A stretch of DNA of 14,382 nucleotides, from NCBI RefSeq assembly GCF_006345805.1, contig NW_021825724.1, positions 1 to 14,382 on the forward strand, given 5' to 3'. Positions within the stretch are counted from its first letter, which is position 1; each line of letters starts with the position of its first letter. This document shows, one piece after another, positions 6,751-7,819 of the stretch. Below the pieces are notes generated by a model. The model was given only the letters and a program-made list of their open reading frames with translations, had not been told where the DNA came from and ran no database searches. The DNA is from Octopus sinensis (Eukaryota). Both the position numbers and the translations under genes were made by a program.

Positions 6751-6856
6751 CAGAATCACAGAAAATGTAGAAGAACCATGGGGTCAACATAGATATAGGA
6801 TTTATGAGTCGTCCAGAGAAGTTTTGGGGTTTTCATGCCATTGATATCAAGATTGG

Positions 6857-7241
6857 AAATATTGAATTTCTAAATCTCTCGTAGAGACATGTACGGTGGT
6901 GGGGCGATAGAATGGTTGTATACTGTCAATCTAACAAGAACGTGACAGTAGGGGGTACACCACCGCTGTATAGCCCTAGGAAGCATCGAACGCCCCCTGA
7001 TAGCTTTGACACATTTTTTCCCTGTGTCCTTATATACATATACGAAGGGGAGACAAACACCCCCGGCCGCCGGAACTGCATCTAGGGACACCGTGTTTCA
7101 GGATCGTTGTCCTTCATCGGCCTAGAGTAGCAGACACCGGTCAGCTGACGATATCTGTCTCGACTTCGTATTTGTATATATGTATATTCAGTGAAGCCTA
7201 TTCACTGATTATCAAAATAAGAAATATTGAATTTCTAAATC
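6857..7241 (-). mobile_element. Candidate non-LTR retrozyme (hammerhead-bearing circular-RNA retroposon): 365-bp unit plus 20-bp terminal redundancy, 10-bp TSD
   Basis: TCAAGATTGG at 6847-6856 and 7242-7251. AAATATTGAATTTCTAAATC at 6857-6876 and 7222-7241 (period 365). Internal hammerhead fold, extensive self-complementarity, no recognisable ORF. Confidence 0.8.
7070..7140 (-). ncRNA. Type I hammerhead ribozyme motif (U4C core variant)
   Basis: Minus strand: CCGG-UGU-CUGC-UAC-UCUAGG [CCGAUGA] AGGA-CAACGA-UCCU [GAAA] CACGGUG-UC^CCUAGA-U-GCAG-UU-CCGG. Stem I is UCUAGG/CCUAGA (7126-7121 with 7086-7081), extended past a bulge by CUGC/GCAG and CCGG/CCGG. Stem II is 4 bp with a 6-nt loop. Stem III is short and quasi-palindromic. 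Predicted GUC cleavage between 7087 and 7086. Confidence 0.85.
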
Positions 7242-7819
7242 TCAAGATTGGTTTGATGGAAAAATGGGAAGGTGACAAATGAACAGATTAAAGAAACAGG
7301 TGAAAATGGATTCCTTATACGAACGGTGAAAGAAAGAAAATGGCTTAATGTGTTTGCCAAGAATTATAATCAAACTAAACACCGAAAAATGACGCAACAG
7401 TGGTAGGAGCAAAAGGCCAAAACTTTGCAAGAATCACCTGACAAACCCGACATGAAAGGCATTTATCAAAATTTGAAGGGTGCATTTGATCCAAGTAAAG
7501 GAGTGTTTTCTGCTATTCTTTCTACAGAAGGACTTCTTCTCACATCTCATAATGGCATTGAAACGCTGGGCTGCGTGTTTTAAAGATGAACACAACAGAG
7601 ATGCTAATGTAGAGTTGAACTCAATCAATAATAGCCAGCAAAGAAGAATGATTGATTCTCTCACATTGGATCCATGTTTGGATGGTGTGAAAGTGGTTAT
7701 AAAACAACTGACAAATGGAAAATCTGGAGAGGATTCCATTGCTGGAGAGATTCTTAAATGTGGTGGAAATATTTTGATGGATAAATTATTTCGAATTTTT
7801 TGCCAGAAGAGTAGCTTGT

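What the first reader, a model, noticed from the sequence alone, without database searches (positions are those of the whole stretch)
6847..7251. Candidate cephalopod retrozyme: a 365-nt circular, hammerhead-bearing RNA captured as a genomic insertion
Seen: TSD(10) - 20-nt repeat - unique sequence - same 20-nt repeat - TSD(10), with period 365 bp, no coding capacity, a type I hammerhead fold and dense base-pairing. The hammerhead lies mid-insert (7070-7140), so the insert is circularly permuted relative to the cleavage site. Joining the 20-nt repeats gives a 365-nt circle (7086 down to 6857, then 7221 down to 7087). Known: non-LTR retrozymes are non-autonomous units of a few hundred nt with type I hammerheads that accumulate as circular RNAs in several metazoans and depend on a reverse transcriptase in trans. 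Inference: RT started on a circular (or multimeric) template, went once round plus 20 nt, and integrated by a TSD-forming mechanism. I do not recall a characterised octopus family, but novelty must be checked.
Basis: partly seen in the sequence, partly recalled or inferred. Interest (0 to 1): 0.93.

Follow-up and report, generated by a model that had tools for sequence, protein, structure and literature searches.

The report
Hammerhead retrozyme-like insertion, slightly over unit length
A 385-bp non-coding insertion carries a classic animal-type hammerhead ribozyme, with one core base changed, and its ends show it was reverse-transcribed from a circular or multimeric RNA; the element type is already known, and this copy preserves unusually clear insertion junctions.

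Summary
A 10-bp target-site duplication (6847-6856 = 7242-7251) brackets a 385-bp insert. Its ends are an exact 20-22-nt direct repeat with a 365-bp period. The minus strand (7133->7076) carries a canonical metazoan type I hammerhead: helix I 6 bp plus a UAC loop, helix II 4 bp, and a short helix III. It is the only descriptor hit in the window (0.017 expected). It is also the only significant hit (27.4 bits, E about 5e-6) of a covariance model I built from the Schistosoma type I hammerhead. The 365-nt unit folds into a branched, rod-like structure (z = -7.6) and has no coding signal.

New finding: the nicked target end can pair at 11 of 12 positions with the hammerhead-polarity RNA exactly next to where copying began. 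This is the best such site on the circle (null 3.6e-4). It points to target-primed reverse transcription running 1.05 units.

Caveats:
- Core position U4 is C.
- Rfam reports no hammerhead.
- No other copy could be found, because no searchable collection holds this genome.
- There is no tandem array.
- A circular template cannot be told apart from an uncleaved multimer.
- "Cephalopod" is unverified.

Verdict: a monomeric, probably dead-end derivative of a non-LTR retrozyme, possibly mobilised by a Penelope-like element (PLE). It is a new member of a known kind.

The parts
6847..6856 (+). Left copy of the 10-bp target-site duplication (TCAAGATTGG). Its 3' end at 6856 is the inferred primer for cDNA synthesis.
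   Evidence: 10/10 identity with 7242-7251, with no extension on either side.
6845..6856 (+). Target end that can anneal to the template RNA (TATCAAGATTGG).
   Evidence: 9/12 identical to element segment 7210-7221 (null 1.3e-3). 11/12 pairable with the minus-polarity RNA when G.U is counted (null 3.6e-4). It is the best site on the whole circle.
6857..6876 (+). Left terminal direct repeat (20 nt, exact to 22 nt through 6878); inferred start of cDNA copying.
   Evidence: Exact repeat of 7222-7241(43).
6857..7221 (-). One 365-nt unit, read as RNA of hammerhead polarity on the minus strand. GC 45.5%, non-coding, with a branched rod-like fold.
   Evidence: Period 365. MFE -136 kcal/mol, z -7.6. 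Circular fold. No Pfam hit or homologue for any ORF.
7076..7133 (-). Type I hammerhead motif. Helix I: CUGC-UAC-UCUAGG paired with CCUAGA-U-GCAG. Core: CCGAUGA (position 4 is C, not U). Helix II: AGGA/UCCU with loop CAACGA. Then GAA; helix III ACA/UGU with loop CGG; C17.
   Evidence: Only descriptor hit in the window, 0.017 expected. Only significant hit of model R1, 27.4 bits, E 5e-6. Helices I and II appear in the MFE fold.
7086..7087 (-). Predicted self-cleavage site (after C at 7087, before C at 7086).
   Evidence: Position follows from the hammerhead alignment. Cleavage itself was not tested.
7031..7055 (-). One arm of the long stem that extends hammerhead helix I into the rod.
   Evidence: 25-nt inverted repeat, 88% complementary, with 7156-7180. 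Paired in the MFE and centroid folds.
7156..7180 (-). Other arm of the helix I extension.
7210..7221 (+). Element segment (TATCAAAATAAG) whose RNA complement is the inferred landing site of the target primer.
   Evidence: (family D1).
7222..7241 (+). Right terminal direct repeat: the extra 20 nt copied after one full turn. 7242-7243 (TC) are shared with the TSD, giving a 2-nt microhomology at the 5' junction.
7242..7251 (+). Right copy of the target-site duplication.

Best explanation
The 385-bp insert is a monomer-plus-20-nt cDNA copy of a small non-coding RNA that carries a canonical animal type I hammerhead. It is a retrozyme-type, non-autonomous retroelement.

Inferred life cycle, taken from the described family: tandem donor copies are transcribed, the hammerhead cuts the transcript into 365-nt monomers, and a host ligase circularises them.

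Shown here by the junctions:
- A nick in the + strand after 6856 left a 3' end (TATCAAGATTGG) that can pair at 11 of 12 positions with the hammerhead-polarity RNA.
- A reverse transcriptase supplied in trans (a Penelope-like element or a LINE) extended that end.
- It copied the RNA for one full unit plus 20-22 nt.
- The cDNA end joined the other side of a 10-bp staggered break through a 2-nt overlap. This produced the TSD.

Because the copy exceeds one unit and its ends are unrelated to the ribozyme cleavage site, the template was either a circle or an uncleaved multimer.

This copy has only one ribozyme site, and its core carries C at position 4. It is therefore most likely a dead-end copy that cannot release a new monomer.
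For: - Exact TSD and exact 20-22-nt terminal redundancy with period 365.
- Hammerhead with 12 of 13 conserved core positions and the canonical metazoan geometry of helix I 6 bp, helix II 4 bp and a short helix III. That geometry is as defined in PMC4209133.
- Model R1 from the Schistosoma type I hammerhead hits only this site: 27.4 bits, E 5e-6, full-length alignment that includes the UAC of loop 1 and the CAA..A of loop 2.
- Helix I continues into a long imperfect stem, and the whole unit is far more stable than shuffles, z -7.6.
- No coding signal.
- Size, GC below 50%, a TSD longer than 4 bp and a self-paired fold with the hammerhead left free all match published non-LTR retrozymes (PMC7229834).
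- Primer-template complementarity of 11/12 at exactly the start site, which is the best site on the circle; null 3.6e-4.
- TSDs of 8-10 bp, more-than-unit insertions, short terminal 'tails' and microhomology junctions are all documented for Penelope-like elements (PMC3846280; PMC8557442).
Against: - Core position 4 is C, where U is conserved. From established hammerhead biochemistry this should strongly reduce cleavage.
- Rfam reports no hammerhead at gathering score or at E<=10.
- This is a single 1.05-unit copy, not the tandem array that defines active retrozyme loci.
- No second copy in the window.
- No related sequence turned up in ORF-based protein searches or in pattern scans of metagenome, viral and prokaryotic collections. 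None of those collections is known to hold the source genome.
- The primer-template match is a post hoc observation on one junction.
- Model R1 was built from a sequence I recalled from memory, with an artificial loop III.
- No expression data.
Confidence: 0.6

Rival explanations
1. Same element and same target-primed reverse transcription, but the template was a linear multimeric transcript of a tandem array that had not been cleaved, not a circular RNA.
For: - The insert needs only a template of at least 385 nt spanning a unit boundary.
- The hammerhead has C at core position 4. If that change was in the template it would hinder cleavage and keep multimers intact.
- Helix III is only 2-3 bp. 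In related animal hammerheads this makes single motifs poor cleavers (PMC4209133; PMC7229834).
Against: - Published retrozyme RNAs accumulate mainly as circles (PMC7229834).
- The C may equally have arisen after insertion.
- Nothing in the sequence separates the two templates.
Confidence: 0.2
2. The insert is a truncated terminal piece (pseudo-LTR plus 'tail') of an autonomous Penelope-like element, not a separate non-autonomous family.
For: - Penelope-like elements carry hammerheads in their pseudo-LTRs.
- They insert 5'-truncated and as partial tandems.
- They show 8-10-bp TSDs and an optional short terminal extension.
- Vertebrate retrozymes are related in sequence to pseudo-LTRs.
Against: - Hammerheads of metazoan Penelope-like elements are the minimal type: helix II 7-8 bp, helix I 4-5 bp, no helix III, and a bulged base after A9. 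This motif is the canonical 6/4/short type with loop 1 and loop 2 nucleotides.
- No minimal hammerhead occurs anywhere in the window.
- No RT or GIY-YIG coding remnant is in or adjacent to the insert.
Confidence: 0.1
3. The hammerhead resemblance is fortuitous or irrelevant. The insert would be an unrelated short structured repeat, or a DNA-level capture of satellite or extrachromosomal circular DNA at a staggered break.
For: - Rfam is silent.
- One core position deviates.
- No other copy is available.
- A fragment of a tandem satellite would also show more-than-unit ends.
Against: - Descriptor expectation of 0.017 per window.
- Independent covariance model E of 5e-6 with a full-length alignment.
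- Helix I is extended into a rod, as in ribozyme-bearing circles.
- An exact 10-bp TSD plus 11/12 primer-template pairing at the start site fit reverse transcription better than blunt capture.
- No tRNA-like head and no A-rich or simple-repeat tail, so it is not a SINE.
Confidence: 0.07
4. An endogenised copy of an exogenous viroid-like or satellite-like circular RNA, reverse-transcribed by a host enzyme.
For: A circle of about 365 nt with a hammerhead and a rod-like fold also describes infectious viroid-like RNAs (literature listed).
Against: - The hammerhead is present in one polarity only, and no other ribozyme is on the plus strand.
- The motif is the canonical metazoan genomic type I that matches the Schistosoma satellite ribozyme.
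- Nothing similar was found in viral or metagenome scans.
Confidence: 0.03

Closest known systems
Metazoan non-LTR retrozymes (Cervera & de la Pena 2020, PMC7229834; coral, mussel, axolotl and other phyla)
   Same: - Type I hammerhead in a non-coding unit of 170-400 nt.
- GC below 50%.
- Highly self-paired predicted circle in which the hammerhead can still form.
- TSD longer than 4 bp.
- Dependence on a reverse transcriptase in trans.
   Different: - Described loci are tandem dimers to multimers; this one is 1.05 units.
- This copy's core has C at position 4.
- Expression and circularity are unknown.
- The host taxon is unverified.
Monomer derivatives of non-LTR retrozymes in vertebrates (Li, Clavereau & Pollet 2026, bioRxiv 10.64898/2026.07.22.740005)
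   Same: A dispersed single-unit copy, interpreted as non-transposing offspring of active tandem retrozymes and linked to Penelope-like elements.
   Different: That work covers vertebrates plus a few insects and a coral. In the sections I read it does not analyse junctions. Here the junctions are the main information.
Schistosoma mansoni Sm-alpha satellite hammerhead (canonical type I)
   Same: - Six-bp proximal helix I followed by a UAC-containing loop.
- Four-bp helix II with a 6-nt loop starting CAA and ending A.
- GAAAC...GUC.
- A model built from it scores this site at 27.4 bits.
   Different: - The 10.1-11.1 pair is A-U rather than G-C.
- Position 4 is C.
- Helix III differs.
- The surrounding unit is unrelated.
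Penelope-like element insertions (pseudo-LTR, 'tail', partial tandems)
   Same: More-than-unit insertion, a short terminal redundancy, a TSD of about 8-10 bp, microhomology at junctions, and a hammerhead in the repeated part.
   Different: - No RT/GIY-YIG ORF.
- The hammerhead is canonical, not the minimal type.
- The whole element is 365 nt.
Plant LTR retrozymes (Cervera et al. 2016, PMC4918200)
   Same: A non-autonomous retroelement that propagates through a hammerhead-processed circular RNA.
   Different: Plant elements have type III hammerheads inside LTRs of about 350 bp, a primer-binding site and polypurine tract, 4-bp TSDs, GC above 55% and circles of 600-1000 nt. None of these applies here.

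Membership tests
Hammerhead ribozyme, type I (canonical metazoan form) | Complete conserved core: C3 U4 G5 A6 N7 G8 A9, G12 A13 A14, the A15.1-U16.1 pair, H17 | tested here: not met
   12 of 13 positions are present; position 4 is C (CCGAUGA). The motif is hammerhead-derived, but this copy's core is not intact.
Hammerhead ribozyme, type I (canonical metazoan form) | Three-helix junction open at helix I: helix I about 6 bp, helix II about 4 bp, and a short helix III capped by a small loop (PMC4209133) | tested here: met
   Helix I is 6 bp, then a UAC/U loop, then 4 bp. Helix II is 4 bp with a 6-nt loop. Helix III is 2-3 bp with a 3-5-nt loop. Definition.
Hammerhead ribozyme, type I (canonical metazoan form) | Significant match to a sequence-plus-structure model of the family | tested here: inconclusive
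   Rfam gives no hammerhead hit at gathering score or at E<=10. My own model from a recalled Schistosoma sequence scores 27.4 bits, E 5e-6, and this is the sole significant hit.
Hammerhead ribozyme, type I (canonical metazoan form) | Self-cleavage at the predicted site | not testable with these tools
   Needs in vitro transcription of monomeric and dimeric constructs.
Non-LTR retrozyme | Small (about 150-450 bp) non-coding unit with a type I hammerhead and GC below 50% | tested here: met
   365 nt, GC 45.5%, no coding signal. The hammerhead carries the caveat given above.
Non-LTR retrozyme | Head-to-tail tandem copies (dimer or more) at the locus | tested here: not met
   Only 1.05 units are present, and there is no second copy in 14.4 kb. 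The locus matches the 'monomer derivative' category instead.
Non-LTR retrozyme | Multi-copy family in the genome | not testable with these tools
   No collection that can be searched by DNA is known to hold the source genome. Indirect searches were empty.
Non-LTR retrozyme | Accumulates as a monomeric circular RNA | not testable with these tools
   Only the predicted fold is available.
Penelope-like element (autonomous, or a pseudo-LTR fragment) | RT plus GIY-YIG ORF, or a minimal hammerhead (long helix II, no helix III) in the repeat | tested here: not met
   No Pfam hit in the insert ORFs or in the flanking ORFs I tested. No minimal-hammerhead descriptor hit in the window.
SINE | tRNA-, 7SL- or 5S-derived head and an A-rich or simple-repeat tail | tested here: not met
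   ARAGORN finds nothing and Rfam finds nothing. Neither end of the insert has a tail.
Plant-type LTR retrozyme | Type III hammerheads in LTRs, primer-binding site and polypurine tract, 4-bp TSD | tested here: not met
   The hammerhead is type I, the terminal repeat is only 20-22 nt, and the TSD is 10 bp.

The most novel reading that the evidence does not exclude
This locus would be a preserved record of rolling-circle, target-primed reverse transcription of a ribozyme-processed circular RNA in an animal. In that reading, initiation is set not by a defined 3' end but by annealing of the nicked target DNA to whichever stretch of the circle it matches best. If so, copies across the genome should show many different permutation points. 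Each copy's upstream flank should be complementary to the template just beyond its own start. That would turn the proposed but unproven retrozyme mobilisation step into something testable from genome sequence alone.
Probability: 0.3. Interest if true: 0.65.

Novelty: new member of a known kind. Interest (0 to 1): 0.45.

Why it matters
Retrozymes are thought to spread through circular RNA intermediates copied by a borrowed reverse transcriptase. [quoted passage not shown]

A clean insertion with four features gives a concrete, sequence-level prediction for that step: an intact TSD, more than one unit, ends unrelated to the cleavage site, and a target end complementary to the template at the start point. 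The prediction can be checked on every other copy in the genome.

If the host is confirmed as a cephalopod, it would also add a lineage for which my literature searches found no described retrozyme family. On its own, one mutated copy is an ordinary member of a known element class.

Tried and rejected
1. Rfam at gathering score on the whole window, at E<=10 on 701 nt, and at E<=10 on a 71-nt slice. No hammerhead was reported, only chance snoRNA and hairpin-ribozyme fragments.
2. Looking for other copies through ORFs. The 75-aa minus-strand ORF was searched against 5.8 billion proteins and the 77-aa plus-strand ORF against 1.84 billion representatives; I also did an exact look-up of a 51-aa ORF. 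All were empty.
3. Pattern scans for the hammerhead, both exact and with degenerate loops, in JGI metagenomes (2 scans), IMG/VR (2 scans) and GTDB genomes (1 scan). All were empty.
4. BLASTN of the unit against the rest of the window. Only TA-microsatellite matches appeared.
5. Identifying the host:
   - The LINE-like ORF at 7480-8019 has no homologue.
   - A neighbouring LINE 3' part has homologues, but the closest are unnamed (Logan SRR9105631 at 97.7% nucleotide identity, GCA_024449705.1 at 90.7%).
   - Cluster look-up and two literature searches for those accessions gave no organism.
6. Confirming an empty site from a paralogue. The flanks have no second copy in the window.
7. SINE reading rejected: no tRNA-like gene and no tail.
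8. Minimal hammerhead of the Penelope-like element type rejected.
9. The first circular-fold script timed out because of a faulty shuffle routine. I repeated it with mononucleotide shuffles and with the tool's dinucleotide shuffles.

Full report
**Observation.** The window reads as repeat-rich animal DNA, with microsatellites, dispersed repeats and decayed LINE fragments.
- At 6847-6856 and 7242-7251 the same 10 nt (TCAAGATTGG) occur, and the match does not extend on either side.
- Immediately inside them lies an exact direct repeat, 6857-6878 = 7222-7243. It is 22 nt long and its last two bases overlap the right-hand duplication.
- The insert is therefore 385 bp with a 365-bp period.
- A 10-nt match at fixed positions flanking a terminally redundant segment is not a chance pattern.

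**The ribozyme.** On the minus strand, 7133->7076, the sequence folds as a type I hammerhead.
- Helix I is CUGC-UAC-UCUAGG paired with CCUAGA-U-GCAG.
- The core is CCGAUGA.
- Helix II is AGGA/UCCU with loop CAACGA.
- GAA follows, then helix III ACA/UGU with loop CGG, then C17. Cleavage is predicted between 7087 and 7086.
- A descriptor requiring helix I of at least 5 bp, helix II of at least 3 bp, helix III of at least 2 bp and at most one core mismatch finds only this site on both strands. Shuffled windows give 0.017 hits.
- The geometry matches the published description of canonical metazoan hammerheads: helix I 6 bp, helix II 4 bp, short helix III. It does not match the minimal hammerheads of metazoan Penelope-like elements (PLEs), which have helix II of 7-8 bp and no helix III (PMC4209133). 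No such minimal motif occurs in the window.

*Two caveats on the ribozyme.*
- Position 4 of the core is C where U is conserved. From established mutational work this should impair cleavage.
- Rfam reports no hammerhead at its gathering score or at E<=10, even on a 71-nt slice.

*Independent test.* I built a covariance model from the Schistosoma Sm-alpha type I hammerhead. I recalled that sequence from memory and closed helix III with an artificial loop, so it is a lead turned into a test, not a curated reference.
- With filters off, the model gives one significant hit in the window, exactly this site: 27.4 bits, E about 5e-6, aligned over the whole model.
- The alignment includes the UAC of loop 1 and the CAA..A of loop 2.
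- The next best hit scores 7 bits.
- I conclude the motif is a genuine type I hammerhead derivative, and that this copy has one damaging-looking core change.

**The unit.** The 365-nt RNA of hammerhead polarity has an MFE of -136 kcal/mol, against -97 +/- 5 for dinucleotide shuffles (z = -7.6).
- As a circle the MFE is -131, and the opposite polarity gives -119.
- Helix I runs on into a long imperfect stem; its arms include 7031-7055 and 7156-7180.
- Helices I and II of the hammerhead stay formed in the MFE. This is what has been described for animal retrozyme circles (PMC7229834).
- GC is 45.5%.
- The longest reading frames (up to 79 aa round the circle) have no Pfam match and no homologue in two very large protein collections.

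**The junctions (new).** The 12 nt of target just left of the insert (TATCAAGATTGG, 6845-6856) resemble the 12 nt of the element just left of the second repeat (TATCAAAATAAG, 7210-7221).
- Nine of 12 positions are identical. Only 0.13% of the window's other 12-mers reach that.
- Two of the three differences are G for A. Read as a DNA primer on the hammerhead-polarity RNA (5'-CUUAUUUUGAUA-3'), the target end therefore forms 9 Watson-Crick and 2 G.U pairs out of 12 (null 3.6e-4).
- This is the single best landing site for that end anywhere on the 365-nt circle; the next best pairs at 9 positions.
- Copying starts at the very next template base.
- At the other end the cDNA and the target share 2 nt (TC).

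**Mechanism.** The simplest reading is target-primed reverse transcription.
- *Shown by sequence:* a staggered break 10 bp wide; a primer end complementary to the template; a copy of 1.05 units; a microhomology 5' junction.
- *Inferred:* that the template was RNA; that it had hammerhead polarity; that the enzyme came from a PLE or a LINE; that the template was a circle.
- TSDs of 8-10 bp, more-than-unit insertions, an optional short terminal 'tail' and microhomology junctions are all on record for PLEs (PMC3846280; PMC8557442). PLEs have been proposed as the mobilisers and ancestors of animal retrozymes.
- A circle and an uncleaved multimer give the same product. The C at core position 4, if present in the template, would favour the multimer.
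- This copy has only one cleavage site, so it cannot release a monomer and is probably a dead end. It corresponds to the 'monomer derivatives' noted in vertebrates.

**What could not be done.**
- No collection searchable by DNA is known to hold the source genome.
- ORF-based searches, exact look-ups and pattern scans for the hammerhead all found nothing.
- Copy number, tandem donors, other permutation points, the family consensus at position 4, and an empty site all remain untested.
- The host is not identified. A LINE 3' fragment at about 12.7-13.4 kb is 97.7% identical to a contig of Logan run SRR9105631 and 90.7% to a contig of assembly GCA_024449705.1. I could not find an organism name for either. 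The best named protein relatives are echinoderm and cnidarian at 50-59%.

**Comparison and verdict.**
- The element works like, and most probably derives from, the non-LTR retrozymes described in coral, mussel, axolotl and many other animals (PMC7229834).
- As a locus it fails two strict membership features, an intact core and a tandem arrangement. I therefore file it as a monomeric retrozyme-derived insertion, not an active retrozyme.
- My literature searches found no described retrozyme or hammerhead family for octopus or cephalopods. The kind is known, however, including in molluscs.
- It is a new member of a known kind. Its interest lies in the unusually legible junctions, which give a genome-wide testable prediction for how these RNAs are primed for reverse transcription.
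- Interest 0.45. Confidence in the main explanation 0.6.

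Noticed in passing
window 7836-9085, with related pieces at 11765-12094: At least six copies of a repeat of about 230 bp, packed head-to-tail and head-to-head at 84-95% identity, starting about 600 bp to the right of the insert. Their nature (SINE cluster or inverted/tandem retroelement ends) was not determined. 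No hammerhead-like motif is in them.
   Followed up: partly
window 3397-4380 and 10383-11629: Two copies of a dispersed repeat of about 1 kb at 87-90% identity, each with internal subrepeats of about 200 bp (for example 3949-4162, 4170-4381, 10975-11217, 11430-11629).
   Followed up: no
window 12558-13400: 3' part of a LINE (zinc-knuckle CRICG... motif and the ...IDVSIPADDNV...VGALG... region) with several frameshifts, next to an (AAT)n run. It is 97.7% identical in DNA to a Logan contig (SRR9105631) that encodes a 684-aa RT protein, and 90.7% to a contig of GCA_024449705.1. These are the best leads to the source organism.
   Followed up: partly
window 6538-6783, minus strand: Weak match (E 0.015, below the Pfam cut-off) to the ISXO2-like DDE transposase domain (PF12762), just left of the insertion site. 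Possibly a decayed DNA-transposon remnant.
   Followed up: no
window 6840-6856 joined to 7252-7830, plus strand: The flanks read like a decayed LINE ORF2 stretch between the endonuclease and RT domains: ...YQDW|FDGK... across the empty site, then ...LKGAFDPSK... and ...IKQLTNGKSGEDSIAGEILKCGG.... Neither Pfam nor the protein search supports this, so it rests on my memory of LINE sequences.
   Followed up: partly
window 14003-14329, plus strand: An ORF of 109 aa (stop to stop; 98 aa from the first ATG) resembling the C-terminal end of a LINE ORF2 (...KWKPVGYRKKGRYKNSWRR...). No Pfam hit.
   Followed up: no
window 72-644, about 900-2450, 2700-3400, 5200-5560, 9554-9895, 12640-12700, 13370-13440: Long microsatellites, inferred only from the repetitive ORF translations in the ORF list: acidic poly-D frames, YI-type and SIYL-type repeat frames, and poly-I/poly-N frames. 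They make up much of the window, and GC falls to 18-26% in places.
   Followed up: no
window 7074-7133, minus strand: In the MFE fold of the isolated hammerhead, core bases CCG (positions 3-5) pair with the CGG of loop III instead of forming helix III. This alternative pairing could compete with the active fold. Helix III plus its loop (ACACGGUGU) is nearly palindromic, which would allow a dimeric helix III as in amphibian and PLE hammerheads.
   Followed up: no
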